Both the position numbers and the translations under genes were made by a program. Under the pieces are notes generated by a model. It saw only the letters and a program-made list of their open reading frames with translations. It did no database searches and was not told where the DNA came from. Positions 2,518-55,358 of a stretch of DNA of 64,000 nt are shown piece by piece (within the stretch, counting starts at the first letter, position 1; each line of letters opens with the position of its first letter). The stretch comes from Mustelus asterias. Taxonomy: Eukaryota. The stretch covers positions 67,890,001 to 67,954,000 of the forward strand of contig NC_135804.1 in NCBI RefSeq assembly GCF_964213995.1. Direction: 5' to 3'.

Positions 2518-2858
2518 ATCATAGAAACCCGACAGTACAGAAAGAGGCCATTCGGCCCATCGAGTCTGCACCGACCACAATCCCACCCAGGCCCGACCCC
2601 CATATCCATACATATTTTACCCACTAATCCCTCTAACCTATGCATCTCAGGACACTAAGGGGCAATTTTACCATGGCCAATCAACCTAACCCGCACATCT
2701 TTGGATTGTGGGAGGAAACCGGAGCACCCGGAGGAAACCCACGCAAACACGAGGAGAATGTGCAAACTCCACACAGACAGTGACCCAAGCCGGGAATCGA
2801 ACCCAGGTCCCTGGAGCTGTGAAGCAGCAGTGCTAACTACTGTGCTACCGTGACGCCC
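2518..2858 (-). mobile_element. Full-length HE1/V-SINE-type SINE (duplicate at 31949-32289)
   Basis: The reverse strand reads ggtagcacagtagttagc (A box) ... gggttcgattccc (B box), then the V domain and a CR1-like 3' tail. Confidence 0.9.
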
Positions 2859-4735: not shown

Positions 4736-5109
4736 GACAGCATGTGGCAAGCAGGGCACCGACTCACAACATCTCCAATGACGTCCCCAGAATCAAGGAG
4801 ACATACTCCCATGCCACCCTTGCATGCCACAAGGTCCTGCATTGGTATTTATTCTCCCTTATCCCCACCCTGTTCTGGACCCAGGTGCGAGCGGGCATGC
4901 AGAGCTCAGATAAGAGTCACACCTGTTTGCACAATAGCAGCGTCACATAGTGTCACATAACGAGTCTTGATCACCCTCCTGTCTGCCACAGAAACATGCC
5001 AACAGAGCTTATAGAGGCCCACCACTCTGGTGTAAATTTGGCGCAGGGTTGACTCGGGGTACACAACGGGGGGCAGGTGGAATCCAGCAGCAGCAACACA
5101 GGCCCCCTA

Positions 5110-9045: not shown

Positions 9046-9047
9046 AG

Positions 9048-24050: not shown

Positions 24051-24205
24051 AACAAAGGTCTCCATCAGCCATGTAAAACGAGTGAAGGTGGAGAATGAAA
24101 CCCCGTGACAGGACAATGATGAGAATAAAGAAAGTGAACAGGTAGGGAGACAGGAGCAAGACAAGTTGACAGAATTGTAACCTGTTCCTGAATTTTTGAA
24201 ATTGC

Positions 24206-27200: not shown

Positions 27201-27825
27201 CCCATCCGAACCACACTCGCAAAACTCCCAGCTAGGATATTCGTACCCCTCCAGTTTACGTGCAACCTGTCCTTCTTGTACGGGTGCCATCCTCTCTTGA
27301 AGACTTCCCAGTGGTCCACGAATTCGAAACCCTCCCTCCTGCACCAGTCCCTTAGCCACGCGTTCAGCTGTGCAATCTCCCTGTTCTTAGCCTCACTGAC
27401 TTGTGACACTGGGAGTAGTCCAGAGATCGCTACCCTAGAGGCCCTGCTTTTTAGCCGAATACCCAACTCCCTGAATTGCTCTCGCAGGACCTCCCTGCTC
27501 TTTCTGCCTACGTCATTTGCACCAATGTGGACAATGACGTCTGTCTGGTTACCCGCCTTCTTTAGGATGCTTCCTACCCGCTCAGTGACATCCAGGACCC
27601 CGGCATCAGGGAGGCAGACTACCATCCTGGAGTCTCGGTCACGCCCACAGAACCGCCTCTCTGTGCCTCTAACCATTTCATCCCCCACTACTATTGCTCT
27701 CCTCGTTCCCCTCTGTCCCTTCTGAGCCACAGGGCCCGATTCCGTGCCAGTGAACTGGTCACCGTGGCTTACCCCTGGAGGGTCATCCCCCACCCCGCCA
27801 CAGTATCCAAAATGGTATACTTACC
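24206..27825 (-). mobile_element. Young CR1 LINE, 5'-truncated in ORF1: SGNH esterase ORF1 (27191-27793), APE (26082-26861), RT (24366-26042)
   Basis: ORF1 VVGDEMVR / VHIGANDV / DRLH; APE VVVGDFNFP and SDHN; RT VPQGSVL and FADN (catalytic D lost). The 3' tail is (ttctttg)n. Confidence 0.95.
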
Positions 27826-27904: not shown

Positions 27905-29620
27905 TTAAAAATTTATTAATGTCACGTGTATTAGTATGCAGTGAAAAGTATTGTTTCTTGCATGCTATACAGGCAAAGCATACAGTACATGCAGAATAAA
28001 AGGAAGAGTGCAGAATGTCGTGTTTCAGCCATAGCTAGATTGTAGAGAAGGATTAACTTACTACGAGGTAGGTCCATTCAAATGGCTGATGGCAAAAGGG
28101 AAGTAATTATTATTGATTGGTACATGACCTCAGACTTCTGTATCTTCTTCCCAACGGAATAAGGTATGTCTGAGTTTCACAGGGTCCTTGATTATGCTGA
28201 CTGCTTTTCCGAGGAAGTGCTCAGTCTCGACAGAGTCAATGGTTGGGAGGCTTGTTTGCTTGATGGATGGGGTGTCGTTCATGATACTTCGTACTTTCTT
28301 GCGGTCTTTGACAGAGAAGTAGCCATGCCAAGCTGTGGTACAGCCAGAAAAAAATGCTTTCTGTGGTGCACCTCTAAAGCTTGGTGAGTGTCATCGAGTC
28401 ATAGAGTCATAGAGGTTGACAGCATGGAAGGAGGCCCTTCTGCCCAACGTGTACATGCTGCCCTTTTTTAAAAATCCCTCAACTCATCCCAATTGCCTGC
28501 ATTTGGCCCGTATCCCTCTATACCCATCTTACCCATGTAACTGTCTAAATGCTTTTCTAAAGTCAAAATTGTAACCCGCCTCTACAACTAACTCTGGCAG
28601 CTTGTTCCAGACATTCACCACCCTCTTTGTGAAAACATTGCCCCTCTTGATACTTTTGTATCTCTCCCCTCTCGCCTTAAACCTATGCCCGCTAGTTTTA
28701 GACTCCCCTATCTCTGGGAAAAGATATTGACTATCTAGCTGATGTGTGCCCCTCAATATTTTATAGACCTTCATAATATCACCCCTCAGCCTTCTGTGCT
28801 TCACGGAAAAAAGACTCAGTCTGTCCAGCCTCTCCTTATAACTCAAACCATCAAGTCCCGGTAGCATCCTAGTAAATCTATTCTGCACTCTTTCGAGTTT
28901 AATAATATCCTTTCTGTAAGAGGTGACCAGAACTGTACACAGTATTCCAAGTGTGGCCTTACCAATGTCTTGTACAACTTCAACAAGACGTCCCAACTCC
29001 TGTATTCAATGTCCTGACCAATGAAACAAAGCATGCTGAATGCTTTCTTCACCACTCTGTCCACCTGTGACTTCACTTTCAAGGAGCTATGAACATGTAC
29101 CCCTATATCTCTTTGTTCTGTCACTCTCCCTAGCACTGAGTAAGTCCTGCGCTGGTTCAATCTACCAAAATACATCACCTCGCTTTATCTAAATTAAATT
29201 CCATCTGCCATTCGTCAGCACACAAGCCCAATTGTTCAAGATCCCGTTGCAATCGGAGATAACTTTCTTCACTGTCCACTATGCCACCAATCTTGGTGTC
29301 ATCTGCAAATTTACTAACCTCCTATATTCTGATCCAAATCACTAATATAAATGACAAATAACAGCGGACCCAGCACTGATCCCTGAGGCACACCGCTGGT
29401 CACAGGCCTCCAGTTTGAAAACCAAACCTCTACAACCACCTGTCAAAAATACCAATTTTGTATCCATTTGGATACCCCTCGTTGGATCACGTGAGAGTTA
29501 ACCTTATGCAACAACCGACCATGCGGTACCTTGTCAAAGGCCTTGCGAAAGTCCATGTAGACAACATCAATTGCATTGCCCACATCTACCTTCTTGGTTC
29601 GCCATTCAAAAAACTCAATC
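27905..29620 (-). mobile_element. Rex1 3' fragment (27905-28395) followed by a CR1 3' fragment (28400-29620)
   Basis: LVRPHLEYCVQFWSP and VDVVYMDFRKAFDKVPHG, with a CR1 tail of short repeats at 28395-28415. Confidence 0.8.
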
Positions 29621-32600
29621 ATGTCATAGTGGACATGCCACATTTCGTTCACCTTCTGAGAATGTAGGGAGGATGTTGGGCTTTCTTATCTATAGCATCG
29701 GCGTGGAAGCACCAGGACAGGTTGCTGGTGATCTGGACATATAGAAACTTGAAGCTCTCGATCATTTCCACTTCATCCGTGTTGATGGAGGCAGAGACAT
29801 GTCTTCCTGAGGTAAATGATTATTTCCTTCACTTTGAGGAAGATTTTATTGTCATCCCACGAATCTGTCAAATTCTCTCTCTCTTTCCTGTATTCTGTCT
29901 CAGCATCGCTTGAGATCTAATCCATATGTGTGATCGCATTCTTTGTGCTGATGATACAATTCCTTTCTGATATTTTGATGAAATAAAGGTTTGAATATGA
30001 GATATTTATGAAATCCATAAACCTGTTCCTCTGTGCTCACTCATTTTATGCAATTGCTTAACAAACAAAATTGTTTCGTGGGAGTTAGTCCGAGGTCACC
30101 AAATGAAATGTACCATTTACTGTGAGTACTGTTTTCGCCAGTGGAGATAGTAACGTAGGGACAAATGTTTCCAGCAGACGATTGGTCACGTTGAGACAAC
30201 CAAACACACAAAAATTAATGCAGATGAAATCGAGAAGCTTATTGCCAATAATGAGCAATTGAACAAAAATGTGCTCAGTGTCGAGAAGCAACTTCCATGC
30301 ACAAAAGATCAATTTGCCAGTGAAAAGCTGGAATTGATATGAACAATTTCAAATGTGTCGCATCAATGATAATCTGGATGAAATAAATGCAACAACAATA
30401 AATCTTCCGTTAAAATTAGATTAACTGCAATATCAAAAAATTCCAGAATGTGTTGTGCAACAAAATATTTGAACAGGGAAAATGAATGGCCAGTGAAGCA
30501 TAAGAGGTGCTTAAAAATCAAGACTGATGGACGGTTTGAACTTCGTCGTGAGACGGTTAAGAAGATTTTTGAACTTTGATGCAATCCTGAAATTATGGAA
30601 GATGATCTTATATACTTGAAGGATCGATGATCATGGATACTTATATACAGTTGCATGTTAGGCTGACACAGAGTGTGGAGCAGCCGGAATCCTACCAATG
30701 GTTGAGTTTACAAGAGACCATTTGAAACAAACATATCAGTTTCATTTTCATGGCGGGTGTTTTACATCCTGTTGCACTGGTCAAGTAGCATAGCGGGGAG
30801 GGAAATTTAGCAGAAGACAAATTACTTGAAATGTGCGTGGTCTTCCACGATACGCCCAGGCCGTTTTGTCGAACGCAATCTGCATCGCACCCAATGTGCC
30901 CGATGTGAATTAAAATGTTTGTGACATCGTTACCATATCATTCGTGAATTCAGCATGGCCGGTTCCTCTTCCTGTACCTCCTGCCACCCATCTCCCACCC
31001 CCACAGCGTGACGTAATGTCGGCATTATTTACACATGAGACAGAATTTTACGAAAGAAATTCTAAGTGCCAAGCTGGCGTGAAAATGGGAGAGTTTTATT
31101 TCCGTTTATTGGCCGAGGCCAAATCAATACCTTATAGACGTAGAGAAGTGGGCATCGTGGGCAACACGGTGGCAAAGTGGTATGCACTGCTGCCTCACAG
31201 CGCCAGGGACCCGGGTTCATTTCCGATCTCGGGTTGTGTATGAGTGGAGGGTGCACATTCTCCCCGTGTCTGCGTGGTTTTCCTCCGGGTGCTCTGGTTT
31301 CCTTCCACAGTCCTAAGGTTTTACACCCTGTTGCACTGGTGAAGTAGCATAGTGGGGCGGGAAATGTTAGCAGAAGCCAAATAACGTGAAATGTGCCTAG
31401 TCTTCCACGATACGCCCAGGCCATTTTGTCGAGCGCAATCTGCATCGCACCCAGAGTGTGCCCGATGTCATTTAAATTTTTGTGACATCGTTACAATGCC
31501 ATTCACCGGTTAGGTCGATTGGCCACGCTAAACTGACCCTAGTGTCAGGGCATTCGTAGAGTAAATACGTGGGGTCACGGGAATAGGGCCTGGATGTGAT
31601 TGTGGTCAGTGCAGACTCAGTGGGCCGAATGGCCTCCTTCTGCCTGTAGGGATTTTATGGATTCTAAGAAGTTTTTAAAAAACTGCTAGGTCATTTCTCG
31701 CCACGATGTGAAGTGGGCGGGACCTCGCCAGGAAGCCTGCAGTTCAGATCGGAGCCACAACATGCACAGGCGTCAAAACTGGACGAAACGGAGAGCTGGC
31801 CAGATTGCTTGGGACGTTGGAAAGGGACGGCAGAGCAGCCTGGGAGGCGGTGGCATTGGCTGTCAGTGCGAGGGCACTGACACAGACAACCAGAAACTAG
31901 TACAGGAAGAAACTTAATTAGCTGTTCCATGCAGCAAGGGTGAGTATGATCATAGAAACCCGACAGTACAGAAAGAGGCCATTCGGCCCATCGAGTCTGC
32001 ACCGACCACAATCCCACCCAGGCCCGACCCCCATATCCATACATATTTTACCCACTAATCCCTCTAACCTATGCATCTCAGGACACTAAGGGGCAATTTT
32101 ACCATGGCCAATCAACCTAACCCGCACATCTTTGGATTGTGGGAGGAAACCGGAGCACCCGGAGGAAACCCACGCAAACACGAGGAGAATGTGCAAACTC
32201 CACACAGACAGTGACCCAAGCCGGGAATCGAACCCAGGTCCCTGGAGCTGTGAAGCAGCAGTGCTAACTACTGTGCTACCGTGACGCCCCACGCCCCTCC
32301 CCCACCCCCCCACGCTTTGCTGCTCCCACCCATCCTCCCCACGACAACTCGGAAGACAGCTGGGATGAAGGCGATGATGGGACCTCCTGTGTTGGCACAA
32401 GTCTCGTATCAGCTTCCACTTCGTATTCCCATCCCATCGACGATCACACTGGTGCTTCAAGTTAATGGTAGGCATCTGGGTCACTCTCTGGGGCACAGCA
32501 CACACCTGCTGACGTACATCGGATGGAGGAAGGAAATTCGGAGGCCGCTGGCACGTGGAACCCTGCCAGTGAGTGAGGACTCAGCTGACCCCAGGCAACA

Positions 32601-34540
32601 TGTTGGGCCTCTGCGGACAGTTCTCCCTCAGCTGCTGGAGATGCAGCAGCAGAGACCAGGAATGTAGGAGGGGCTGACAGCAACACTGGGCCAACGACGA
32701 GGCTGCTGGGAGGAGTCCCAAATCTTTCAGGACCAGCTGCTATTGCTGATCTCATGTGGTTCCCAGGTCCAAAATGAAAGTGGGGTGTCAGCGGTGGAAA
32801 GCCTGGGGTAGGAAATGATCACTTGAGTGGCAGGGTCCAAGCGATGGCTATGTCACAGCTGTCCACAGGCGATTCCCAGAGGGCCACAGCTGAGTCACAG
32901 CAGGCCACAGCTAAGTCGGAGTGGGCCATACCTGAGGGCCTCAACAAGCTTATCGAGATTCTGCAGCTGGTGGCTGAGAGGCTCGAAAGCTTGCAGGAGA
33001 CCAGTGGGACAGCGCCGAGCCACAGCGGGCTATGGCAGCAGCCCTTGGGAATGTGGCCCACTCTTATTAGGTTATGACTGAGGGAGTGCAGAGTATGGTC
33101 CAGTTTCAGAGGGCAGGTGCTGCTACCCTTGTCAGGTGCCCTCAGACTCAGAGCGCCATCGCTGAGCACTGAGCAGGAGGCCGAACGCAGGTGGGCCTCC
33201 AGAACTGGCAGGGCCCGGTGATGGTGGAGCTTCTGCAGTTCAGTGCAGAAGCACCAGCATCCCATTGAGTGACCCAGGGGCCCACAGGAACCCCGAAGGA
33301 GGAGGAAGGTCTGGGGCCCATGTCGGGGCATTGCACCCCAGAGATGCAGCTGTGACTATAGCTTCTGACTCCCTCCTTCCTGACACCTTCCTGACTATCT
33401 CAGGGGCATTGTGATGAACAAGATGACATGGATACGTTTGTGACATCTGAAAGCCAGACGGGGTCCTCAATGTTCAGGCCCTCCAGAGGACGATTGCCAA
33501 AGGGCATCACAGAGCAGAGCACAGGGCAAGGTAGGCAGCTGCCCTCCTCCTCCTCTGGCGTACATCCTGGGGAGACACCGAGACACAGTAGAGTTAAGAA
33601 GCTATAACGTCACCAAAATGGCATGGGTAAAGGACCGCAACTGTTAAATTGAGGAATTAGGCACTGTAAAGTTTCACTTCCACTTATTATATATGAGCAC
33701 TTAGTTTGAGGGCCCAGTTATTGACAGCAATAAATGTTGCTGCCCCCACAGCTGTTTCTAAATTGTCTGTGATTAGCCTCCAATAGGGATGACCATACCC
33801 CGATCTTCACCAGAGGGACTATGCATGTTGATGTTCATGGAGGAGGGCCCTCAGTGCACCACATTTTGAAAATCAACGCATTCCAATCATCCACTGGCGA
33901 CAGCATGTGGCAGAAAGAAGTCTCACAAAACCAGGTTAAAGTCCAACAGGTTTATTTGGGAGCAAACACCACTAGCTTTCGGAGAGCTGCTCCTTCGTCA
34001 GGTGAGAGGGAGTTCTGTTCACAAACAGGGGAAATAAAGACACAAACTCAATTTACAGAATAATGATTGTAATGCGAATCTTTACAGCTAATCAAGTCTT
34101 AAAGGTACAGACACTGTGAGTGGAGAGAGCATTAAGCACAGGTTAAAGAGATGTGCATTGTCTCCAGACAGCATGTGGCAAGCAGGGCACCGACTCACAA
34201 CATCTCCAATGACGTCCCCAGAATCAAGGAGACATACTCCCATGCCACCCTTGCATGCCACAAGGTCCTGCATTGGTATTTATTCTCCCTTATCCCCACC
34301 CTGTTCTGGACCCAGGTGCGAGCGGGCATGCAGAGCTCAGATAAGAGTCACACCTGTTTGCACAATAGCAGCGTCACATAGTGTCACATAACGAGTCTTG
34401 ATCACCCTCCTGTCTGCCACAGAAACATGCCAACAGAGCTTATAGAGGCCCACCACTCTGGTGTAAATTTGGCGCAGGGTTGACTCGGGGTACACAACGG
34501 GGGGCAGGTGGAATCCAGCAGCAGCAACACAGGCCCCCTA
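29432..34540 (+). repeat. Segmental duplication copy 2 (matches 1-5109)
   Basis: Same sequence as 1-5109. Here the Harbinger transposase continues uninterrupted past 34540. Confidence 0.97.
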
Positions 34541-43900: not shown

Positions 43901-45032
43901 ATTTGAAGAATTTGAAGTTAATGGACATTTAAACCAGGCGTGACAATGGTCATGCTTAACAATATAAAGCTGTGATATCAGATTGTCATCCATTAAAATA
44001 GAGGCAGAATATCCGGGAGGGAGTTGGAGGTGAACGGTGGTAGTAGAAGGACAGTGTGAACAGTGGAGATATAAGATGCTGAGATAGGCAGATAAATGAT
44101 TCAGTCAGCCCAAAAAAATGAGATTTGGCATTTAGCTTGGCTGGGAGTCAATTTAAAAGCTTGATATTTCAATATGATTACTTATACGAGCATAAATCTG
44201 GAACAATATCTGGACGCAGGAAAGGCAAGAGGAAATAATGTTTTCTGACGAATTAGCAGACTGCTGACTCGCCATTTCGGAATATCCAGAATGAGTGAAC
44301 CGCTTTGGAGGAAATCAATGGGCTTTGGAGGAAATCAATGGGCTCAGTCGTGAAATGATGTGGCACCTGCCCCAGACGTGCTAAATCGTTTCGCAACGAT
44401 ATCACAAGCTGAGCACGAGAAGGATCAAGGATGGAAAACCAATTTTAAAAACCTGTGAGGTCAGAAGGCGACTATTTATTGAAAATGTTGCAATTTGAAA
44501 AATGAAAGATACATGGATATTTTCACGTCACACATCAAAGGAGGAGTTGGGAGAGGCGGGTGGTGGTGACAATGATAGCACACATAGAGATTTAAACGAT
44601 TCCTGGAATGATAATCAAATGAAATCCAAATTCATGTGAGAAAATAAGATGAACATTAGCAAATTAAGGAGCGAATCAAGCGTATCACGTCTGGATATTG
44701 GGTAGAGCAAAGATTAGCCAATCTATTAAAATTAAAAGTAAATTAGAGTAGAAAATGACGCAGTCTTTCTTTCATGTTATCCATATATGTGGAATGGCTA
44801 GAATTCGGAAATCCGACGACGGATGAGCATGGTCAACAACGATGGAGTGCCTTGCGTGGAGTGAGTTTCAAGGCAAACAGGAAATCCACAAGATATATTT
44901 GGAGAAAAAATCCACCTGCGATTTTCGAAAATGTCAAAGGCCTGATGTAAAGGCAGTTACCGAGGAAAAGATACACGAAGGTGAATACATCGATTATGCA
45001 GTCATCGCGCAACACTTCCTTGTTTGCTTAAT

Positions 45033-45161
45033 TTAGCTTTTCGTTTTCACGGCTGCGTATGTTAACCTTGTTTCTCCGAATGTCGTTTTTGACGATGACC
45101 TGGAACCTGCCAGATTCAGAGCAACGTAAGTCAATTTGCTCTCAGCGGTGCTCTGTCTGGT
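45033..45161 (-). CDS. Exon 7, terminal cytoplasmic exon with ITIMs LTYVAL and LTYAAV
   Basis: TRQSTAESKLTYVALNLAGSRSSSKTTFGETRLTYAAVKTKS*. Acceptor tttacAG, TAA at 45035-45033. Translated by hand. Confidence 0.87.
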   Translation of the reverse strand, partial: TRQSTAESKLTYVALNLAGSRSSSKTTFGETRLTYAAVKTKS

Positions 45162-48100
45162 CTGTAAATCAACGACAGGGAGTATTTTACTATTTATTAA
45201 CTTAAATGTATCGAAATTGCATCAAGTTGATTTTCAATACAATCTCAAAAGCAAATTATAGCAGACAAGATTAAAGTTTCCACGTGGGAATTGAGATTTA
45301 CCTCTGTATATACCGTGTGTTCTCTGTGTTGTTTCGGCATTTCGCCACGCTTGGAACCGGTCAGATAAAGAGCAGCGTACAGCAGTTTGCCTTCGGCTGA
45401 ATTTCGTTCCTTCTAGGAATTCAATGTTTAGTATTCAGTAAGTTTCATCTTTCGGACACAAAATCTTGCATACATACATACAAATTAGAAACCGAAGCAG
45501 GCCGCTCAACCTCTAAAACCATTTTGCTATTCCTTAAGACATGTTTGATCCCCGTGTGGCCTCAATTTCACTGTCCTTTCTGCGCCCTGAATCTCCAAGC
45601 CTTACAAACTGCCCTAATTCAGTAAGCTCCACAAATATCTACGAATTTCCGTATCGCTCTAACCTCCTAGAGTTCCTTGGCATTTCCCAGCCATTATTCA
45701 CAGTAGTTCTTTACTTTGTAAAAATAACAAATCAAATTAGTGTTTTTTCAGTTTTCTCTCCTGTCAATCAAAAAGTGATCGAAGTCAACCTTGAAGTAAT
45801 TGAATGAATTTGCCTTCACCGCTCTCTGATTAAATCAGTTCTACAGATGCGTGGCCCACTGAGAGGGAAATAAATCAAATCTCCTCATCCTTGTCTTAAA
45901 TGGTAAATCATGCTTTTTCAAACGGCATCACGTATTTTTACCCTTTGCTACAAAGTATCACATTTTTGCAACGTCCATTCTGTCAAGACGACTCAGCATT
46001 TTCTACTTTTCAAAAGATCACTTAGTCTTCTAAAGTGAGGAGGGTACAGGCCCAATCTGTTAAAAATGTCCTCATTAAATAACACGCTCATCCCAGCAAT
46101 CAATCTGGTGAAACTTCTCTTAATTATTTGAACTGAAGTTATTTTATTTCTTCATGAAGGACCAAAGCTGCGTACAATACGTTTGGGCGGGAATTTTACC
46201 GGCACGCCCACGCCGATTCCGGGGGCGGTCGCGACTCGGAGGACGGCTTCCTCCGAAGGCCTCGGGCGGGATAGTACAGACCTCGGGCGGAGGTGCCGGT
46301 CAGATTCTTCCTTCGGCACCAATTCTCAGCTGCAGCACTACACTTTATAATCCACTCCTCTTGCAATGAACGGTAACATTCCATTGGGCATCCCAGCTAC
46401 TTATGCGCCTTCTCAACCATATATTTCGGTTCATATTATTGTGTTCTGATTCATGTACCGGGACATCCGTATGTCTCTGTACATCAGAGTCTAAAATATC
46501 TTCGCATAAAAAAAATATGTGTTTTATTCTGACTGCTAAAATGGACAAATTCGCGATCTCTCACGTCATCTGTCATTTTTTGCACACTCTTTACCTATCC
46601 GTGACCCTCTGCAGACTCCATATTTCCCCCTTGCCACTTACTCACCCATCTACTTTCTTTCATCAACATCTTTAGCAGCCATGCGTATAGTGTTATCATC
46701 CAAGTCGTTGATATCAATTGTAAATAATTGAGGACCCAAGACTGATACACATGACACTACAATTGATACATATTTTTCCAACCAGATAAAAGGCCAAAAT
46801 GTGCCTACTCTATGTTTCCTGACAGCTAGATAGTCCTTGATAGATGCTATCACCTGTGTCATGTGATCTTGCTCTGTGTGGAACCTTTGATGTCGAACAT
46901 GATGGAATGTCTTTTCGAAATCCACAGGATCCACAGTAACTCCACAGGTTCGGTTTTATTCACTTTGCTTGTTACTTTCTCAAATAACTCATACATTATG
47001 TAATAATAATTTCCAGGTTACAACGCCATGTTTACTCTGCTAACCTCCATCAGATTTCCCAAGTGCCCTGTTACAACTCCTTTATTAATGGATTCCAGCA
47101 TTTTCCCAATGGCAGATGTTAAGCTAATTGCCCTGTAGTTTCTGGAATACTGTTTCCCTCCTTTCTTGAGCAAAGGAGCTACATTCGCTGTTTTATTCAA
47201 ATCTAATGTGTCGCTGCCAGAATCTAGGACATTTTGAAAATTTAAATCCAAGTCATCCAATATCTCAGCAGTTACTTATTGTAAGACCGTCGTAACAGTT
47301 GCATCATGCTTGGGAATTTTCAGATTTTTCGTTATATTATTTTTTCAGCAGCATCATCCTGCTGAAAGTAATCGTTTTATGCTCTTGCTTCCGTTTCGCA
47401 TCGCGATATCCAATTATTTCTGGTATATGCTTTGTATCCTCGACAGCGATATATGTTCCGTTGATTCTGCTTTCGCTTGATTGGCAATCCTAATTCGTCA
47501 GACTCGCTCTTTGGAGGAGCAGCACATTATAAGTAGTTGCTTTTACATCACCTGTGGAAACTCTTCCGATTTGTGCTGCATATTAATAGCTAACGATCGG
47601 TCCTGCTCTGATGTTTCACTTCATTTTTAGCCATTATTCGCTGTAATTTATGCAACTTGTTCGTCTAACCTGCCAGTAAACTTCAGGGAATTGATTTTGT
47701 TTATTTCAATTTGATCCTGTTGATAACTTCCTTAGTAAGCCGCGGATAATATGTCCGTCCCCTCGAGATGTTTTATTCTTTCTGACTCAAATGGCTGAGA
47801 ATTAGAAAACATCTCCTTAAGTTTCTGATAAAAGCACGACAGCTGTGGATGCTGGAATAACAACAGAAAATGCTTGAAAATCTTAGCAGGTTGACAGCAT
47901 CTGTAGAGAGAAAATAGAACGAAGTCCAGATCACCCTTCGTCAGAGCTTCGTCAGATCCCTTGTCAGCATTTTGCAATGACAAAGAATCGAGGATGGAAG
48001 TAGCAAAGATCAAAGACCATAACAGCACAGAAACAGGTCGTTTGGCCCTGCAAGCTGAAATGTCAGCTTGTGAAAGAGAAAGACGGGCTGCCTGAACAGT

Positions 48101-51100
48101 ATAAATAGATTTTTTTTCTGAATCGCCTGGTGGATACATTTTTTTATTCTTAAGCAAAGAATAACGGGTGATCTCATTTTAAACCGCGTAAGAAGGATAG
48201 GCAACAGTGTTGCTCTCTATTTTCGTTACCGATTCTACACTGAGATTAGAAATTTGAATTTTATTTGTAATATAAATGCCGTGGCACGTTTTCACCATGC
48301 TGCAGCTTGGTTTGCACAACAAGAAATGCAAATCTGCGAACCTTATTCTCACTATCTTTAGTAGCCGAAAAAGGTATGTCATTTTAGCTAATATAGATGG
48401 AAAGTTAAAACTGTATTGAACTATTCAAAAAGCTGGCAGAGTTTGCAAACGCTTCGACCATTTTTCTAATTTTACTTGTTTATACATAAAGTTGCGCTTT
48501 TCCAGAAAAGGGGAAAAGTCAAGTCCAAATCCCCACATGTTTAAAAGAGATTTATTTAATGTGATGTCATTCACCTGAACTTGAGAACACAAGTTCAGGA
48601 TTGAGAACAAAATGTGCTTACCTCATCTGTCCGCTGTGTAGTATTTATTGATTTTTTCTTTGCACCTGGTGAAATTCGAAAAGGATAACGTATAAATAGG
48701 GGGCATATTTGCATTTGACCCGATGTCAATTAAGTAAAATGCAATTCATGCCAGCAAGTTATAGTGATACGCTGATTTCGTAATATATCACAAAATGTTC
48801 AAACCAAACGAATTTGTTTCGCTATCGCTTCTGTATTAAAGCTACGCAGGCACCATTGCACTATTTAAGTTACATTTTTATGGTTAGATAATGCAGTTCG
48901 GAAAATGAAGCTGTGAGCATTATAATGTCAGATGCTCATGTAATACTTGAGTTGAAGCAACATGTAAGTGTGAAGGTATTTTTCCGTCAGCTAATTATGC
49001 GAATTATACCAAAAAGCAGCTTTGCTCCCGCTTATAGTTACTCGAATCGGATATTTTAAGATTTCGCCTACCAGTAAATTATTTCCTTCAGTGTGAAAAT
49101 TCTCATTCATACCTTTGCACTTTATGACTCCAATCACTAGCATTAGGGTCAAAAATAGAATTGCAAGTACACCACCGGACCATCCACCGACCATAAGAAC
49201 ATTGATTTTAGAGGGATTAGCTATCAAAATTAGAAAATGTCATGTCAACCATATGTACACAGCTATCAATATCAAATGCATAATTTTCAATTACGCTGTG
49301 AATCGAACATCATGATACAAAATATAAAACTTCAGTACATCATTTTCATTATCGATATTTATGCAGCTGTTTTACGAATCGTTCGAAAAAACGTGGTTGA
49401 AACATATAGATCATAGAATCCTTGAGTCGTAGAATACCTACAGGGCAGAAGGAGGCCATTCATCCCATCGAGCCTGCACCGACAAAATTCCCACGCAGGC
49501 TCTATCCCCGCAACTCCACGTATTTACGTTTCTAAGGCCCCTGACACCAAGGCACAATTTAGCATTGCCCACCTAACACACACATCTTTGGAGTCTGGGA
49601 GGGAACCGGAGCAGCCGAAGGAAACCCGCGCTTTCGCAGGCAGAATGTGCAAACTCCACACAGTCATCCGAAGGCCGAATTGAACACGGGTCCCTCGCAC
49701 TGTGAGGCAGCTTACCTCTGTGCAAGCCTGTTGGAGAAAGAGCAGCAATGTTGAAGAAGGTGCCCATTGAATGGGCACATTCCCATTCATGACTATACAG
49801 AATGCAATCGTTTTCAACTGATTGTGCCAATCAAAAAACAATTAAAATGTTGTTCCAAGTTTCATTGCACCACACGCAGAAAAGGTCCAAACAAATCGCT
49901 TGAGATCATCTTTCAAGGAAAGATGCATTACCGTGTATTTACTCATCTTCTCACAATTACCTGTGACCCTATTTTTAGTCGCATTACGAGTGAGTAACAA
50001 CTTTATAAATGAGGAATCAAGTTGGTTTAGTTCGTATCTGCAGCTATATGAAAAGATTCAATTGTTCGATTCCATAGCTCAGCGATCCATTATTTTTCAG
50101 TGCCTCGATTGAACATCGATGCTGCATCATTTTCTAAGTTGCAATTTTATGCGGTTAATCTGATTTATGGGAGCAATACTGAAGACTCAAACCCATTATT
50201 GGTTAGGTTGCATGATGCAGTCTACAACATATCCTATTTTAAAACCAAATGATTCGAAACCTTCGCCCAAAGAATACAATAAGTTTCATCAATATATGAG
50301 CATCAAGCTACTCCAGTAATCACTTCCTATGCACCATCGTTTTTCATGCATTTTTGTGAAGGGCGAAAGACTAAAAACTATCATATTTCATATAAGATTA
50401 CCTTCATCAAAAAACGTGTAGCTGGCATTTGCTGGCATTGAGCTTGAAACGTGATAAACTTGACAGATATAAACTGTGCCTTGTTCGATCGCCTGCTGTT
50501 TCAGGTTGCTGACAACTTCAAAAAGCCCCTCGGAATTTGCTTGTTGTTCATTTTGGAATCCGCTGAGAATTTGAGCACCGTTTTTATGCCAGGTGAGGTT
50601 AAATCCTTTCGGGTAAAAAGCTGCAGTTTTGCACTGGAGCCTAATAGTAGCAGATGAGATCTCTTCGGATGATATGGACATAATTTTCAGGGGAGCCGCT
50701 GGAGCTAAATTCAAGATAACAAGACAGATAAATTGAAAAAGTGAGCTTCTGCTCTAAAAAATTGTAATTTTATTAATTACGTACAGCTTGTTCTTGGCAA
50801 GCAAGTTTCTTTAATAATCAGTATTTTTATATTGCTGCGCGGTGTTTTTCATAGATTTTCTAGGTCCCTCCACCCGTACGCTATTAAAGGACTACCAGCA
50901 TGTTTAGCAAAATTGACTTGCATAATTTGTCCCTCTTTATTTAAACCTATGTGTTACAGTCGGTATACTGCATTTAAGGATTTAGCGATTGGGAGAAGGG
51001 GGAGGGCCGGGGGTAGAGGAAAGGTGATAGCGTAGCGATATTATCGCTTGGCAACTAATCCAGAAAATCAACTAATATTCCCGGAACTGGCAAGTGGTGG

Positions 51101-54100
51101 AATTTGAATTCCATTCGCAATATCTGGAACTAAGAACCGACTGATCACCATGAAACCATTGTCGATTGTCTGGGGAAAAACGCGCATCTGGTTCAGTAAT
51201 GTATTTTAAGGAACGAAATCTGCCGTCTTCTCGGTCTGGTCTACACGTGACTCCAGATTCACAGCAATGTTTACGGAGTGCTTATACTTCAATGCAAGGA
51301 GCGTAGCAGGTAAGCCTGACGAATTTAGGGCCTTAATGCTCACGAGGAATTTGGATGTGGTTGCGGTGACAGAGACTTGGTTGAAAGAGGGACAGGACTC
51401 GCAGCTGAATATTCCGGGGTACAAGTGTTTTAGGCGAGACAGTGGAGGGGCCAAAAGAGGTGGGGGGGGGGGGTAGCAGTATTAGTTGGAGAGCATATTA
51501 CTGCGGTGCAGAGGGAGGACAATTCAGAGGGGTCGTGTAACGAGTCACTCTGGGTGGAGCTTAGAAACAGGAAGGGCGCAGTCACTATGTTGGGGGTATA
51601 CTACAGGCCCCCCAACAGCCCAAGGGAAGTGGAAGAACGGGTATGTCAGGAGATACTGGATAGGTGCAGGAAAAATAGGGTTGTTGGAGTGGGAGACTTC
51701 AATTTCCCCGGTATAGACTGGAAATCGCTGAGAGCTGGGACTCTGAATGGGGAGGAATTTGTAAAATGCATACAGGAGGGTTCTTTGGAACAATATGTAG
51801 ATAGCCCGACTAGAGAGGGGGCTATACTGGACCGAGTACTGGGGAATGGGCCTGGTCAGGTCTTCAAAGTTTCCGTAGGGGAACATGTGGCAAATAGTGA
51901 CCAAAATTCTGTTAGCTTTAGGATAGTGATGGAAAAGGATGAGTGGTGTCCCAAGGGTAAGGTGTTGGATTGGGGGAAGGTTAACTTTAGTGAGATTAGG
52001 CAGAAATTGGCAGCTCTTGATTGGGAGAGGCTGTTTGAGGGTAAATCCACATCTGGCATGTGGGAGTCTTTTAAGGGACAGTTGTTAGGGCGACGGGACA
52101 GGCATGTGCCTGTAAAAAAGAAGGATAGGAAGGGTAGGATTCGAGAACCGTGGATAACCAGGGAAATTGAGGGACTGATCAAAAAGAAAAGAGAGGCGTA
52201 TGTTAGGTCCAGGCAGCGAAAAACGGAGGGAGCTCTGGAGGAGTACAAAGGAAGTAGGAAGTAACTCAAATGGGGAATTAGAAGGGCAAAAAGGGGTCAC
52301 GAAATGTCCTTGGCAGACAGGATTAAGGAGAATCCCAAGGCATTTTATTCATGCGTTAGGAACAAAAGGGTTGTCAGGGAAAAAATCGGACCTCTCAGGG
52401 ACAAAAGTGGGGAATTATGCTTGGAGCCCAAAGAAGTAGGGGAGATCCTAAATGAATACTTTGCGTCGGTATTCACAAAGGAGAGGGATGTGTTGACTGG
52501 GAGAGTCTCGGAGGGGAGTGTTGAACCGTTGGTGAAAATCTCCATTACATGTGAGGAAGTGTTAGGTTTGTGAGAGAATATAAAGGCTGACAAGTCCCCA
52601 GGGCCTGATGGAATCTATCCAAGGCTGGTCAGGGAGATGAGAGATGAAATCGCTGGGTCTCTGACGCAAATCTTTGTCTCGTCACTGGACACAGGTGAGG
52701 TCCCAGAGGATTGGAGGATAGCTAATGTGGTCCCCTTGTTTAAGAAAGGTAGGAAGGATAACCCGGGTATTTATAGGCCGGTGAGCTTGACGTCCATGGT
52801 GGGGAAGTTGTTGGAGAAGATTCTTAGAAAAAAGATGTATGCGCATTTAGAAAGGAATAAACTCATTAACGATAGTCAGCATGGTTTTGTGAGAGGGAGG
52901 TCATGCCTCACTAACCTGGTAGAGCTTTTTGAAGAAGTGACTAGAATGGTTGACGAGGGAAGGGCCGTGGATGTCGTCTATATGGACTTTAGTAAAGCGT
53001 TTGACAAAGTCCCGCATGGTCGGCTGGTGAAAAAGGTTGGATCTCATGGGTAAAGGGGGAGGTGGCTAGATGGGTGGAGAACTGGCTTGGTCACAGAAGA
53101 CAGAGGGTGGTAGTGGAAGGGTCTTTTTCCGGCTGGAGGCCTGTGACTAGTGGTGTTCCGCAGGGCTCTGTATTGGGACCTCTGCTGTTTGTGATTTATA
53201 TAAACGATCTGGAAGAAGGTGTAACTGGGGTGATCAGTAAGTTTGCGGACGACACAAAATTGGCAGGACTTGCAGATAGTGAGGAGCATTGTCAGAGGCT
53301 ACAGAAGGATATAGATAGGCTGGAAATTTGGGCAAAGAAATGGCAGATGGAGTTCAATCCTGATGAATGCGAAGTGATACATTTTGGTAGAAATAATGTA
53401 GGGAGGAGCTATACGATAAATGGTAGATCAATAAAGTGTGTAGATACGCAGAGGGACCTGGGTCTGCAAGTCCACAGATCCTTGAACGTGACGTCACAGG
53501 TGGAGAAGGTGGTGAAGAAGGCATATGGCATGCTTGCCTTTATAGGACGGGGCATAGAGTATAAAAGTTGGGGTCTGATGTTGCAGATGTATAGAACGTT
53601 GGTTCGGCCGCATTTGGAATACTGCATCCAGTTCTGGTCGCCACACTACCAGAAGGACGTGGAGGCTTTGGAGAGAATACAGAGGAGGGTTCCCAGGATT
53701 TGCCTGGTATGGAGGGGCTTAGTTATGAGGAGAGATTGGGTACACTGGGGTTATTCTCCCTGGAAAGACGGAGGATGAGGGGAGACTTAATAGACATGTA
53801 TAAAATTATGAAAGGCATAGATAGGGTGAACGGTGGGAAGCTTTTCCCCAGGTCGGTGATGACGTTCACGAGGGGTCATAGGTTCAAGGTGAAGCGGGGG
53901 AAGTTTAACACAGATATCAGGAGGAGATATCTGACACAGAGAGTGGTGGGGTCCTGGAATGCGCTGCCAGGCAGGGTGGTGGAGGCAGACACACTGGGAA
54001 CGTTTAAGACTTATCTAGATGGCCATATGAACGGAGTGGGAATGGAGGGAATCAAAAGAATGGTCTAGTTTGGACCAGGGAGCGGCACGGGCTTGGAGGG

Positions 54101-55358
54101 CCGAAGGGCCTGTTCCTGTGCTGTATTGTTCTTCGTTCTTTGTTCTAATGTTGTTTACTCTGAGCAAGGACAACTAAGGATGGACATTAAATGCTCGCCA
54201 GCCAGCGAAGCCCAAGTCCCACGAATAACTAAAAAAGAAACAATTGTTGACACCAGCCATTCAGGAATAAACGTGGATGATAGAAGCTTGAAAGGCGCCT
54301 CCAAACGTTTGGATTGTGAGCCCCACTCGCTTGTAATTTGCGAAAGGGCATTAAAAATGCAAATATTGCGAGCGACTATAAAATTATTCATCCCGTTACA
54401 ACGTTCCCACATTGAAAACGAATTTTACTTATTAGTTTTGCTTGGCAAACTTCAAGTCAAGTAGCATTTCTTTAAGATAGGGATTTGATAAACTTTTCAG
54501 TGTCGTTGCAACTGCAAGTTTTCCACTTTGTTGAACATCTGTTCTTCTAATCAAGTGAATGTGCTTTCAGCGCTCTGCATTTATTTATTTTAATGGTCTA
54601 TTAACCTTCTTTTATTGACTCCATCTACTATGCATGACATATTTTCAACTTACCATATATGAGTACTTGCACCGCAATATCTTTCACAATCATCCGATGC
54701 TGAATTTTGACTGCACAGTGATATGTTCCGGCATCCGGTATGTTGACATTCAGGAGTTGAAGGTACGCTCCACCTTTCATTATCTGGAAGCGTTTTCCGC
54801 TGTCCTCCTGCAGCAACCTCTTATTACCATCTTTCCACCAGAAAGCCGTTGCGTTTATAAAGTCGGTATGGAAAGGGAAAGGACATCGCAAGGTTACGTT
54901 TGTGCATCTGAGCGCCTTTATTGGTTCAATATCCGATGTGCCCATAGCAACTATAAACAAAAATGAACACACACATACTAAATCATACATATGCAATAAA
55001 AGTTGATGTATACTACGAAAATAACATCACCCGTTCAGTCCACATATACCGTAACAATTTAATGTGCCTCACTGCTAGAATTATTCTCGAGTTCCAGCAT
55101 TTGTATTTCGACTTGAGATTTCTAAATATGTTTTACTCACCCAGACCCTTCCGACCACTAGGAACACGTGGCATGGCAATAAACACAATTTTAAAAAAAA
55201 TAAAGACATTCACTTTTCCGCCAACTATGAGATCACCTTACTGTTGCGTCTGGCTCGCGAATAGTCATAGAAAACAAAATGAAAACATAAAATAGAAATC
55301 TACCTGGAAGGAAAATCGACAAAAAAACTTTGCCCCAAAGCGAACAACCCATGACCAT
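45033..55358 (-). CDS. Seven-exon IgSF inhibitory receptor: leader-V-C1-TM-cytoplasmic ITIMs, 348 aa (SIRP-like / V-C1 type)
   Basis: Exons 55304-55358, 54654-54950, 50402-50704, 49113-49220, 48622-48665, 45302-45412 and 45033-45161. All introns are GT..AG with phases 1,1,1,1,0,0. The joined length is 1047 nt with no internal stop. Confidence 0.88.
45302..45412 (-). CDS. Exon 6, cytoplasmic, ITIM LLYAAL plus TVYTE
   Basis: KERNSAEGKLLYAALYLTGSKRGEMPKQHREHTVYTE. Acceptor ttcctAG, donor gag|GTAAAT, 111 nt, phase 0-0. Not in the ORF track; translated by hand. Confidence 0.8.
45470..47450 (-). mobile_element. Old CR1 fragment in intron 5, containing a ~130-bp MITE (46185-46315)
   Basis: LGPQLFTIDINDLD and TANVAPLLKKGG. 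MITE termini gggcgggaattttaccggcac / gtgccggtcagattcttcc. Confidence 0.7.
48622..48665 (-). CDS. Exon 5, short cytoplasmic exon GAKKKSINTTQRTDE
   Basis: Acceptor tttcaccAG, donor gag|GTAAGC. The 44 nt convert phase 1 to the phase 0 required by the next exon. Confidence 0.8.
49113..49220 (-). CDS. Exon 4, transmembrane segment
   Basis: ANPSKINVLMVGGWSGGVLAILFLTLMLVIGVIKCK: hydrophobic and uncharged, with a basic stop-transfer. Acceptor ttttgatAG, donor g|GTATGA, 108 nt. Confidence 0.9.
49405..49715 (-). mobile_element. V-SINE in intron 3
   Basis: Tail gaaggaggccatt, V core and B-box remnant. Confidence 0.75.
50402..50704 (-). CDS. Exon 3, C1-set Ig domain
   Basis: LQCKTAAFYPKGFNLTWHKNG ... 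NSEGLFEVVSNL ... YICQVYH carries the FYP and CxVxH C1-set signatures. Acceptor atttAG, donor g|GTAATC, 303 nt, phase 1-1. Confidence 0.93.
51272..54146 (+). mobile_element. Young CR1 LINE (APE plus RT, several stops), antisense in the V-C1 intron
   Basis: [31 protein letters not shown] and FADD. The tail is (ttctttg)n. Apparent aatgtt target-site duplication inside an older repeat. Confidence 0.95.
54654..54950 (-). CDS. Exon 2, V-set Ig domain
   Basis: Motifs NVTLRCPF (B-strand Cys), FWWKDG (C-strand Trp) and LQLLNVNIPDAGTYHCAV (DxGxYxC). Acceptor tttgtttatAG, donor g|GTAAGT, 297 nt, phase 1-1. Confidence 0.93.
55304..55358 (-). CDS. Exon 1, signal peptide MVMGCSLWGKVFLSIFLP
   Basis: ATG at 55358, hydrophobic core, phase-1 donor cag|GTAGAT. 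It joins the V exon to give ...IFLP-VAMG|TSD, a plausible signal cleavage site. Confidence 0.75.

What the first reader, a model, noticed from the sequence alone, without database searches (positions are those of the whole stretch)
45033..55358. Non-rearranging V-C1 inhibitory receptor in a cartilaginous fish
Seen: a phase-consistent 7-exon ORF with one germline-complete V-set exon (no separate J exon or RSS seen), a single C1-set exon, an uncharged TM and three ITIMs (LLYAAL, LTYVAL, LTYAAV). Known: C1-set domains are restricted to jawed-vertebrate immune molecules (Ig, TCR, MHC, b2m, tapasin, SIRP, B7-H6), and ITIM pairs recruit SHP-1/2. Inference: this is an antigen-receptor-shaped (V+C1) innate inhibitory receptor. 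It may be a shark-specific, uncharacterised SIRP-like family, since mammalian SIRPs are V-C1-C1. Such a gene bears on the origin of antigen receptors.
Basis: partly seen in the sequence, partly recalled or inferred. Interest (0 to 1): 0.82.

Follow-up and report, generated by a model that had tools for sequence, protein, structure and literature searches.

The report
Shark SIRP-like inhibitory receptor gene
This is an intact gene for a cell-surface immune "brake" receptor from a family found in sharks, rays and chimaeras that resembles the mammalian checkpoint receptor SIRP-alpha but is shorter, and it seems not to have been studied.

Summary
The 7-exon, 348-codon minus-strand model is real as sequence. 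All splice sites are AG/GT, the phases fit, and every exon lies in the same order on a 357-aa horn shark protein (XP_067905931.1). Exon 3 is a true C1-set domain by Pfam, PDB sequence search and fold search. Exon 2 is V-like by homology, but it is short (Cys-Cys 56 residues), its model folds like an I-set domain, and its J-like strand is degenerate in this copy. The tail has three ITIM-consensus motifs and four tyrosines spaced 23/14/23, against 24/17/24 in rodent SIRP-alpha.

The gene belongs to a multigene family seen in 17 cartilaginous-fish species. NCBI mostly names its members "SIRP-alpha-like". A family profile aligns with rodent SIRP-alpha from leader to C-terminus (hhalign 99.4%). Some relatives carry an Arg-containing membrane span and a short tail, so this looks like a paired-receptor system.

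Nine literature searches found no paper on the family.

No RNA run was available, so splicing and expression in this species are untested.

The scan has noted similar V(J)-C1-ITIM genes elsewhere in this same genome (unchecked notes).

The parts
55304..55358 (-). Exon 1: start codon and signal-peptide leader (MVMGCSLWGKVFLSIFLP + 1 nt), phase-1 donor GT
   Evidence: By eye, the leader starts MVM like P0012. No BLAST hit at E<=1e-3 for this 18-aa piece.
54654..54950 (-). Exon 2: N-terminal Ig domain. It is V-like by homology and I-set-like by fold, and the G strand lies in the same exon. Canonical Cys22-Cys78, an extra Cys15, two N-glycosylation sequons.
   Evidence: 52-58% identity to the eight nearest of the 15 closest relatives, 43-49% to the other seven; 86.2 bits to the family V HMM
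50402..50704 (-). Exon 3: single C1-set Ig domain (Cys24, Trp38, Cys80; two N-glycosylation sequons)
   Evidence: PF07654, 44.8 bits, cut-off 21; 53-68% identity to close relatives; 129.5 bits; top folds are MHC II beta-2 and Ig CL
49113..49220 (-). Exon 4: stalk plus uncharged transmembrane helix, ending in the KCK stop-transfer
   Evidence: 40% identity to P0012 residues 229-258
48622..48665 (-). Exon 5: 44-nt juxtamembrane exon (GAKKKSINTTQRTDE) that moves the phase from 1 to 0
   Evidence: first candidate listed, with a GTAAGC donor, and the length that gives 348 aa; maps to P0012 residues 265-277, between the TM and e6 matches.
45302..45412 (-). Exon 6: first two-tyrosine module. LLYAAL (45368-45385) and, 23 residues later, TVYTE (45302-45316), which the splice completes to TVYTET.
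   Evidence: 49% identity to P0012 residues 279-315
45033..45161 (-). Exon 7: second two-tyrosine module. LTYVAL (45117-45134) and, 23 residues later, LTYAAV (45048-45065), then the stop codon at 45033-45035.
   Evidence: 54% identity to P0012 residues 317-357, which reach its C-terminus. Similarity of e6 and e7.
44475..44480 (-). Candidate polyadenylation signal AATAAA, 555 nt after the stop
   Evidence: Motif only; no transcript evidence.
51275..54142 (+). Degraded LINE (endonuclease plus reverse transcriptase) inside the intron between e2 and e3, antisense to the gene. Context only, not part of the coding gene.
   Evidence: (84% identity to the copy at 24205-27057)

Best explanation
The locus encodes an intact 348-aa type I membrane glycoprotein. 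It is one member of a multigene family of Ig-superfamily receptors found across cartilaginous fish and homologous along its whole length to SIRP-alpha (SHPS-1).

Its parts are a short V-like domain with the G ('J-like') strand in the same exon, one C1-set domain, an uncharged transmembrane helix, and a tail made of two duplicated two-tyrosine modules. It is germline-complete and does not rearrange.

Inferred mechanism: an unknown ligand binds the N-terminal domain. Src-family kinases then phosphorylate the ITIM tyrosines. The 23-residue spacing lets the tandem SH2 domains of SHP-1 or SHP-2 dock, and the phosphatase damps activating signals in the cell that carries the receptor.

Relatives with an Arg in the membrane span and a short tail probably act as activating partners through an ITAM adaptor. 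That would make this a paired-receptor system like SIRP-alpha and SIRP-beta.

Shown here: gene structure, domain types, motifs, family membership, homology to SIRP-alpha. Inferred: expression, phosphorylation, SHP recruitment, ligand, pairing.
For: - Gene structure: all splice sites and phases fit, the reading frame is open through 7 exons, and the total is 348 aa.
- Collinearity: e2-e7 match P0012 (Heterodontus XP_067905931.1, 357 aa) in order at 28-122, 126-225, 229-258, 265-277, 279-315 and 317-357.
- Independent family HMMs: 86.2 bits for e2 and 129.5 bits for e3.
- C1-set identity: Pfam 44.8 bits against a cut-off of 21. The AF2 model has pLDDT 88.3, and all listed Foldseek matches are MHC class II chains or Ig light chains.
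- SIRP homology: hhalign of family profile A1 against rodent SIRP-alpha gives 99.4%, E 1.1e-21, 337 columns including the tail. PDB SIRP-alpha 2wng scores 96.7 bits with V+C1 contiguous. The P0012 search reached rodent SIRP-alpha at E 1.5e-11 as its only hit outside cartilaginous fish, 1 of 18.
- Tail: tyrosine spacing is 23/14/23 here and 24/17/24 in SIRP-alpha.
- Paired forms: 12 of the 198 proteins on hand have R-x(14-20)-[DEN]H membrane spans with tails of 6-54 aa.
- Polymorphism: of 40 shown differences out of 84, four are exonic (two synonymous, L>M, R>L). No listed stop or indel falls in an exon.
Against: - No RNA run exists for this organism in the index. The four runs laid are genomic contigs, and none of the 9 listed joints lies at an exon border. 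Splicing and expression here are therefore untested.
- The window copy has Cys where at least 90% of relatives have Gly (position 15). It has also lost the G-x-G of the family's J-like motif, which could mean relaxed constraint.
- The N-terminal exon is below all Pfam cut-offs.
- The family V HMM scores the SIRP-alpha V domain at only 14.3 bits.
- In the C1 tree the link to SIRP C1 domains has only 53% support.
- SHP binding, the ligand and the cell type are inferences from motif knowledge, not results.
Confidence: 0.72

Rival explanations
1. It is the direct cartilaginous-fish orthologue of SIRP-alpha itself: the same gene lineage and a CD47 receptor on myeloid cells. It would have lost one C1 domain and part of the V domain, and then expanded by tandem duplication.
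For: Full-length hhalign match including the four-tyrosine tail. NCBI names most members 'SIRP-alpha-like'. In the C1 tree the family lies on the same side as the rodent and lungfish SIRP C1 domains.
Against: There is one C1 domain instead of two. The V domain lacks the stretch where SIRP-alpha has C'-C'', and the family V HMM gives the SIRP-alpha V domain only 14.3 bits. Tree support for the SIRP link is 53%. CD47 binding is untested.
Confidence: 0.2
2. It looks intact but is a non-functional or silent copy, a young pseudogene in a fast-evolving multigene family.
For: The conserved Gly15 is replaced by an unpaired Cys and the J-like G-x-G is lost. A 2.9-kb LINE sits in the e2-e3 intron. There is no expression evidence.
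Against: There is no stop or frameshift in 1047 nt across 7 exons, and all 12 splice dinucleotides are intact. The AF2 models of both Ig exons are confident, with pLDDT 90.9 and 88.3. Relatives P0162 and P0165 also lack the G-x-G. Among the shown differences from other individuals or haplotypes, none breaks the frame.
Confidence: 0.12
3. It is a B7-family or NCR3LG1 (B7-H6)-like ligand (IgV-IgC-TM) that is recognised by a receptor on another cell, rather than being an inhibitory receptor itself.
For: The V exon alone hits CD276 and PD-L1 in the PDB sequence search. Pfam C2-set_3 (butyrophilin Ig-C) scores 27.2 bits on e3. NCBI calls several relatives 'NCR3LG1-like'. CD276 scores 89 bits to the family profile.
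Against: The CD276 score is summed over a four-domain chain. C1-set beats C2-set_3 on e3, 44.8 against 27.2 bits. The tail aligns with SIRP-alpha's four-tyrosine tail. Arg-TM short-tail partners are a hallmark of paired receptors, not of B7 ligands (this last point is from recalled knowledge).
Confidence: 0.05
4. It is a relic of the antigen-receptor lineage, a UrIg/UrIg2-type non-rearranging VJ-C1 gene, rather than a SIRP-like receptor.
For: UrIg2 (PDB 9dmx) scores 109 bits to the family profile over three stretches. The family consensus has a J-like NGTGxxLxV motif. Multi-C1 shark proteins top the C1-exon search by summed score.
Against: UrIg and UrIg2 have a typical VJ domain and several to eleven C domains (PMC12227049, section 7). 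This gene has one C1 and a shortened V. In the C1 tree the multi-C1 shark proteins fall on the other side from the family. UrIg2's score comes from several domains.
Confidence: 0.03

Closest known systems
SIRP-alpha (SHPS-1, PTPNS1) and the SIRP paired-receptor family
   Same: Order of parts: leader, V-type domain with a J-like G strand, C1-set domain, TM, and a four-tyrosine tail in two modules. Spacing is 23/14/23 here and 24/17/24 in SIRP-alpha. Full-length profile match at 99.4%. Relatives with a basic residue in the TM and short tails recall SIRP-beta.
   Different: One C1 domain instead of two. The V domain is about 12 or more residues shorter where SIRP-alpha has C'-C'', and its model is nearest to I-set folds. 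The third tyrosine motif is TVYTET. The ligand is unknown. The family is large and divergent, and was seen only in cartilaginous fish.
UrIg / UrIg2 (non-rearranging shark VJ-C genes; PMC12227049)
   Same: Germline-joined V with the G strand in one exon, C1-set constant domain, split leader, membrane-bound form, found in cartilaginous fish.
   Different: UrIg2 has a typical VJ domain and 9-11 C domains, and no ITIM tail is described in the section read. This gene has one C1, a shortened V and ITIMs. The C1 domains fall on opposite sides of the tree.
Ig light chains and TCR chains (V-C1)
   Same: The same two-domain order. Ig light chains match the family profile across V+C1 at up to 83.9 bits. 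The C1 model superposes on Ig CL at TM 0.80-0.83.
   Different: No RSS and no separate J segment. The V domain has no C'-C'' (CDR2) stretch. Ig and TCR chains lack an ITIM tail (recalled).
B7 family (CD276, PD-L1, NCR3LG1/B7-H6)
   Same: IgV-IgC-TM layout. Weak sequence hits of the V exon to CD276 and PD-L1. NCBI names some relatives NCR3LG1-like.
   Different: The constant domain scores higher as C1-set than as the butyrophilin-type Ig-C domain. The tail and the whole-length match point to SIRP.
Teleost NITRs (recalled, not tested here)
   Same: Non-rearranging V domains with J-like motifs, inhibitory (ITIM) and activating (charged TM) forms, large fast-evolving families.
   Different: As recalled, NITRs pair the V with an I- or C2-type domain, not a C1-set domain. 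No NITR sequence was on hand to compare.

Membership tests
Cartilaginous-fish V-like/C1/TM receptor family (NCBI 'SIRP-alpha-like' models such as XP_067905931.1) | N-terminal Ig exon matches the family V profile | tested here: met
   86.2 bits, E 1.1e-25, with an HMM built without the window. 52-58% identity to the eight nearest of the 15 closest relatives, 43-49% to the other seven.
Cartilaginous-fish V-like/C1/TM receptor family (NCBI 'SIRP-alpha-like' models such as XP_067905931.1) | Single C1-set exon matches the family C1 profile and falls inside the family clade | tested here: met
   129.5 bits. In the C1 tree the 40 family rows are one side of a branch (SH-aLRT 93), and the window sits in a 14-row clade with 99% support.
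Cartilaginous-fish V-like/C1/TM receptor family (NCBI 'SIRP-alpha-like' models such as XP_067905931.1) | Same exon order through the TM and the two-tyrosine tail modules | tested here: met
   e2-e7 are collinear on P0012 to its C-terminus.
Cartilaginous-fish V-like/C1/TM receptor family (NCBI 'SIRP-alpha-like' models such as XP_067905931.1) | J-like NGTGxxLxV motif in the G strand | tested here: not met
   The window reads VKDIAVQVLIY at that place. Relatives P0162 and P0165 in the same clade have also lost it, so the motif is not universal in the family.
SIRP family | N-terminal V-set domain with C' and C'' strands | tested here: not met
   Cys-Cys span is 56 residues. The AF2 model shows no C'-C'' hairpin. 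The top Foldseek hits are I-set domains. hhalign puts a gap opposite SIRP-alpha's C'-C'' stretch.
SIRP family | Two membrane-proximal C1-set domains (V-C1-C1) | tested here: not met
   There is one C1 exon, and no other family-like Ig exon in the window. Relatives also have one C1; 89 of the 93 family-like proteins have one C1 hit of at least 40 bits.
SIRP family | Cytoplasmic tail with four tyrosines in two ITIM-type pairs | tested here: met
   LLYAAL, 23 residues, TVYTET, 14, LTYVAL, 23, LTYAAV. This aligns with ITYADL/TEYASI/LTYADL/SEYASV of rodent SIRP-alpha. The test is at motif level only.
SIRP family | Whole-length sequence homology to SIRP-alpha | tested here: met
   hhalign 99.4%, E 1.1e-21, 337 columns. 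The test was done with the family profile, not with a joined window protein.
SIRP family | Binds CD47 and recruits SHP-1/SHP-2 | not testable with these tools
   Needs binding assays.
SIRP family | Orthologous (syntenic) position | not tested
The window itself holds no other recognisable gene.
C1-set Ig domain (PF07654) | Score above Pfam's gathering cut-off, and a C1 fold | tested here: met
   44.8 bits against a cut-off of 21. Foldseek top matches are MHC II beta-2 and Ig CL, TM 0.75-0.85.
V-set Ig domain (PF07686) | Score above Pfam's gathering cut-off | tested here: not met
   22.1 bits against a cut-off of 26. Ig_3, ig and I-set are also below their cut-offs. Relatives do carry precomputed PF07686 hits.
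Rearranging antigen receptors (Ig/TCR) | RSS next to the V segment and a separate J segment | tested here: not met
   The G strand is in the V exon and is followed directly by a GT donor. No heptamer-spacer-nonamer in the window. The only heptamer near the exon is the reverse complement of the H-C-A codons.
UrIg / UrIg2 | Typical VJ domain followed by several C1-type domains | tested here: not met
   There is one C1 exon. The description of UrIg2 was read in PMC12227049, section 7.

The most novel reading that the evidence does not exclude
The family may be the surviving cartilaginous-fish form of the lineage that also gave rise to SIRPs. Its members are a short VJ-like domain plus one C1 domain on either an ITIM tail or an Arg-containing membrane span. 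Their one-V, one-C1 layout would then be the ancestral layout of an innate paired receptor of the kind from which antigen-receptor chains were built, rather than a shortened SIRP. If so, sharks keep a large, diversifying set of pre-RAG-style V-C1 receptors next to the rearranging ones.
Probability: 0.18. Interest if true: 0.75.

Novelty: new variant of a known kind. Interest (0 to 1): 0.5.

Why it matters
C1-set domains occur only in a few jawed-vertebrate immune molecules, and non-rearranging V-C1 genes are candidates for relatives of the gene that the RAG transposon invaded (PMC12227049, abstract and section 7; PMC10751288, passages).

This gene shows that cartilaginous fish carry a sizeable family of SIRP-like V-C1 receptors with inhibitory and probably activating forms. 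The family is fast-evolving and, as far as the searches here show, undescribed.

It offers a tractable system for three questions: how old ITIM/SHP checkpoint signalling and paired receptors are, what such receptors recognise in the oldest living jawed vertebrates, and whether SIRPs began as V-C1 or V-C1-C1 molecules.

It is not a new principle. The mechanism expected is the ordinary ITIM one, and database pipelines already call the relatives SIRP-like.

Tried and rejected
Searches and tests that gave nothing:
- V exon alone against the 5.8-billion protein set: no candidate. That tool sees only proteins of 55-175 aa for this query, so the blank says little.
- Paralogues in the window: none with the gene's own exons or with the family HMMs.
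- RNA evidence: no holder on record as RNA. The four runs are genomic contigs from one study. Their 9 listed joints have sides of 20-23 letters, join repeats and miss all exon borders.
- VLYAAL at 46157-46180: no usable splice sites and only 8 residues of similarity. I did not take it as an exon.

Readings considered and set aside:
- UrIg/UrIg2 identity, rejected on domain number and V type.
- B7/NCR3LG1 identity, rejected mainly on the tail and the full-length SIRP match.
- SIRP sister-group in the C1 tree: unresolved at 53% support. The tree used 39 of the 93 family-like proteins plus the domains of 11 multi-C1 proteins (up to 4 domains each, 25 bits or more). It had no Ig, TCR, MHC, beta-2m, tapasin or B7-H6 references, because none was on hand.
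- The TM/ITIM census is crude, because flanking Lys/Arg count as 'charged TM'. I rely instead on the stricter pattern count.

Tools and files not available:
- Synteny could not be examined.
- The VIA structure libraries were absent.
- Paper supplements are closed and I did not ask for them. Figs S1-S2 and table S1 of PMC12227049 may list further V-C1 genes.

What I saw of the papers:
- PMC12227049: outline and section 7.
- PMC10751288: six passages.
- PMC8236899: one passage.
- PMC12975943: a term search with no hit.
- All others: search listings only.

Full report
**The observation**

The gene lies on the minus strand. Reading the candidate ORFs with their flanks and fixing the exon ends gave six of the seven exons:
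- e1: 55304-55358
- e2: 54654-54950
- e3: 50402-50704
- e4: 49113-49220
- e6: 45302-45412
- e7: 45033-45161

A scan of the 3.7-kb gap between e4 and e6 looked for AG...GT exons that turn phase 1 into phase 0. Its first listed candidate was 48622-48665, 44 nt, with a GTAAGC donor. The seven exons sum to 1047 nt, all with AG/GT, and phases 1,1,1,1,0,0.

LLYAAL, LTYVAL and LTYAAV fit the ITIM consensus. The fourth motif reads TVYTET once spliced. It would read TVYTEV only if the intron were read through. The TM exon has no charge in its core. An AATAAA lies 555 nt after the stop.

Each exon was handled alone, and whole-length comparisons used natural relatives.

**Is it more than chance?**

The C1 exon was searched against 1.84 billion representative proteins. 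It found 543 proteins at E<=0.001 and 8 at E<=1e-30, and 150 were listed. Among them are many proteins of about 250-450 aa with one C1 match at about residues 120-220.

One of these is P0012 (Heterodontus francisci XP_067905931.1, 357 aa). It matches the window's exons in order:
- e2 at 28-122 (54% identity)
- e3 at 126-225 (60%)
- e4 at 229-258 (40%)
- e5 at 265-277 (46%)
- e6 at 279-315 (49%)
- e7 at 317-357, its C-terminus (54%)

Both proteins start MVM (by eye). HMMs of the family's V and C1 blocks, built from 14 relatives without the window, score e2 at 86.2 bits and e3 at 129.5 bits among 1701 six-frame ORFs. No other ORF scores above 10.3 bits. So there is one family gene in this window, and the model is strongly supported by comparison.

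**Domain types**

e3 is a C1-set domain by three tests.
- Pfam PF07654 scores 44.8 bits against a cut-off of 21.
- The PDB sequence search returns Ig constant domains.
- The AlphaFold model has pLDDT 88.3. Its listed Foldseek matches are MHC class II chains (nearly all beta chains) and Ig light chains, with TM 0.73-0.85 normalised to the query.

e2 is less clear.
- All Pfam Ig models are below their cut-offs: Ig_3 23.7, V-set 22.1, ig 21.5, I-set 20.5 bits.
- The canonical cysteines are 56 residues apart.
- The model (pLDDT 90.9) has only scattered single residues between strands C and D.
- Its best Foldseek matches are I-set domains: neuregulin Ig, MLCK, IgLON, titin and NCAM.

Relatives carry precomputed V-set hits, and the family consensus ends in NGTGxxLxV, a J-like motif. 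In the window that motif is degenerate (VKDIAVQVLIY), and a Gly conserved in at least 90% of relatives is a Cys. So the domain is V-derived but shortened, and 'V-set' overstates it.

There is no RSS. The one CACAGTG near the exon is the reverse complement of the H-C-A codons, and heptamers occur at about chance frequency in the window, 11 in 64 kb.

**The family**

Of the 198 proteins fetched, 93 score at least 60 bits on the family C1 HMM. I looked up names for 20 family representatives and saw names for the 18 + 11 hits of two further searches.

Every family member named is from a cartilaginous fish, 17 species in all:
- the chimaera Callorhinchus
- the sharks Heterodontus, two Chiloscyllium species, Hemiscyllium, Stegostoma, Rhincodon, Heptranchias, two Scyliorhinus species, Mustelus and Cetorhinus
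- the batoids Pristis, Hemitrygon, Hypanus and two Mobula species

The one hit outside cartilaginous fish was rodent SIRP-alpha, at E 1.5e-11.

The names given by NCBI or UniProt are automatic. Most are 'tyrosine-protein phosphatase non-receptor type substrate 1-like' or 'SIRP beta-1-like'. Others are 'tapasin-related', 'NCR3LG1-like', 'Ig lambda-like', 'MHC class II beta-like' or 'uncharacterized'.

Several members lie on one chromosome-scale contig in each species. Earlier unchecked notes of this scan report further such genes in this same genome, one of them 34 kb before the window.

In a quick C1 tree (69 rows, 99 columns) the family is one side of a branch (SH-aLRT 93). The window sits in a 14-row clade (99) with ITIM-tailed shark proteins, apart from the batoid rows. 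That fits a shark origin but does not name the species. The window's own protein was not among the hits, so this genome seems not to be annotated in that collection.

**Relation to SIRP**

A profile of 14 full-length relatives aligns with rodent SIRP-alpha over 337 columns (hhalign 99.4%, E 1.1e-21). The alignment runs as follows:
- The leaders align.
- The V domains align, with a gap in the family opposite SIRP-alpha's C'-C'' stretch.
- The J-like strand and the PxP linker align.
- The single C1 aligns half to SIRP domain 2 and half to domain 3.
- The TM aligns.
- All four tail tyrosines align.

Tyrosine spacing is 23/14/23 in the window and 24/17/24 in SIRP-alpha.

Among solved structures, SIRP-alpha (2wng) is the best contiguous V+C1 match, at 96.7 bits. 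Higher-ranked chains (titin, an IgA1 chain, UrIg2, CT3) owe their scores to more domains. Ig light chains reach at most 83.9 bits.

Against this, the family V HMM gives the SIRP-alpha V domain only 14.3 bits. C1 scores to SIRP (29-56 bits) are in the same range as those to teleost and shark multi-C1 proteins (28-48 bits). The tree link to SIRP C1 domains has 53% support. Homology with SIRPs is well supported. One-to-one orthology is not shown.

**Paired forms**

Twelve of the 198 proteins have a membrane span of the form R-x(14-20)-[D/E/N]-H with tails of 6-54 residues. P0015, P0164 and P0166 are examples from the window's own subclade. A cruder census of the 93 family-like proteins gave:
- 41 with a TM and at least one ITIM
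- 23 with a basic residue in or beside the TM and no ITIM
- 10 with an uncharged TM and no ITIM
- 19 without a TM (partial models)

The window copy is of the ITIM type. From recalled knowledge of SIRP-alpha/beta, KIR and similar systems, this pattern marks paired inhibitory and activating receptors.

**Mechanism**

What the tail shows is two duplicated modules. e6 and e7 share 53% identity over 19 residues and about 80% over 40 nt around the ITIM. Each module has an ITIM and a second tyrosine 23 residues on.

The inferred steps are as follows. The tyrosines are phosphorylated by Src-family kinases. The tandem SH2 domains of SHP-1 or SHP-2 bind the paired phosphotyrosines. The phosphatase then damps ITAM signalling. 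The ligand and the cell type are unknown.

**Reads**

No RNA run was found. The four holders come from one study and at most three samples. They are genomic: contigs cover the introns, and two runs show transposase adaptor ends. None of the 9 listed joints lies at an exon border.

Of the 40 shown differences (84 in all), four are exonic: R>L and L>M in e6, and synonymous changes in e5 and e3. The four listed indels are intronic. The exons are thus intact in other reads of this organism, but expression is untested.

**Literature**

Nine searches found no paper describing this family or SIRPs in cartilaginous fish. The library lacks most subscription journals, and supplements were closed, so absence from print is not proven.

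The nearest work is on UrIg and UrIg2. These are non-rearranging shark genes with a typical VJ domain and many C domains (PMC12227049, outline and section 7). There is also a remark that several VJ-C1-type genes exist in tetrapods (PMC10751288, passages).

**Verdict**

This is a real, intact-looking gene. It is a new instance of a cartilaginous-fish family best described as a one-C1, short-V variant of the SIRP kind of paired receptor. It is interesting to comparative immunologists but is not a new principle.

Noticed in passing
window 1-5109 and 29432-34540: Two direct copies of 5,109 bases are 100% identical and lie 29,431 bases apart. This is either a very recent segmental duplication or an assembly artefact.
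   Followed up: partly
window 24205-27793 (-) and 51275-54142 (+): A LINE with an ORF1 carrying a GDSL-esterase-like domain, an endonuclease and a reverse transcriptase, including an open 558-aa RT ORF. The copy in the gene's e2-e3 intron is 84% identical, fragmented and antisense to the gene.
   Followed up: partly
window 45302-45316 and the donor at 45300-45301: The exon 6 donor follows TVYTE. Read through, the intron would add V (TVYTEV, the ITSM consensus) and a stop 19 codons after the exon's last codon. Spliced, the motif is TVYTET. There is no transcript evidence either way.
   Followed up: partly
window 46157-46180 (-): A short open stretch encodes VLYAALVL, which resembles the ITIM exons, but without usable splice sites. 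It may be a relic of a further tail-module duplication or a chance match.
   Followed up: no
window 54714-54720: A CACAGTG heptamer lies on the + strand inside the V-like exon. It is the reverse complement of the His-Cys-Ala codons, and no nonamer follows. Heptamers occur 11 times in the window, about what chance gives.
   Followed up: yes
window 45382 and 45405: Reads of the same organism differ from the window at two non-synonymous places in exon 6. LLYAAL becomes LMYAAL, which still fits the ITIM consensus, and an Arg becomes Leu. The signalling tail is therefore polymorphic, or the haplotypes differ.
   Followed up: partly
proteins P0001, P0002, P0005, P0006, P0188 (other species): Shark and ray proteins with 6-12 C1-type domains, named 'titin-like', 'uncharacterized' or 'Ig mu heavy chain-like' by NCBI, top the C1-exon search by summed score. 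They may be UrIg/UrIg2-type genes under wrong automatic names.
   Followed up: no
window 8400-10130: A GC-rich stretch (57% GC) of low-complexity Gly/Pro-rich ORFs on both strands. It looks like a simple-repeat region.
   Followed up: no
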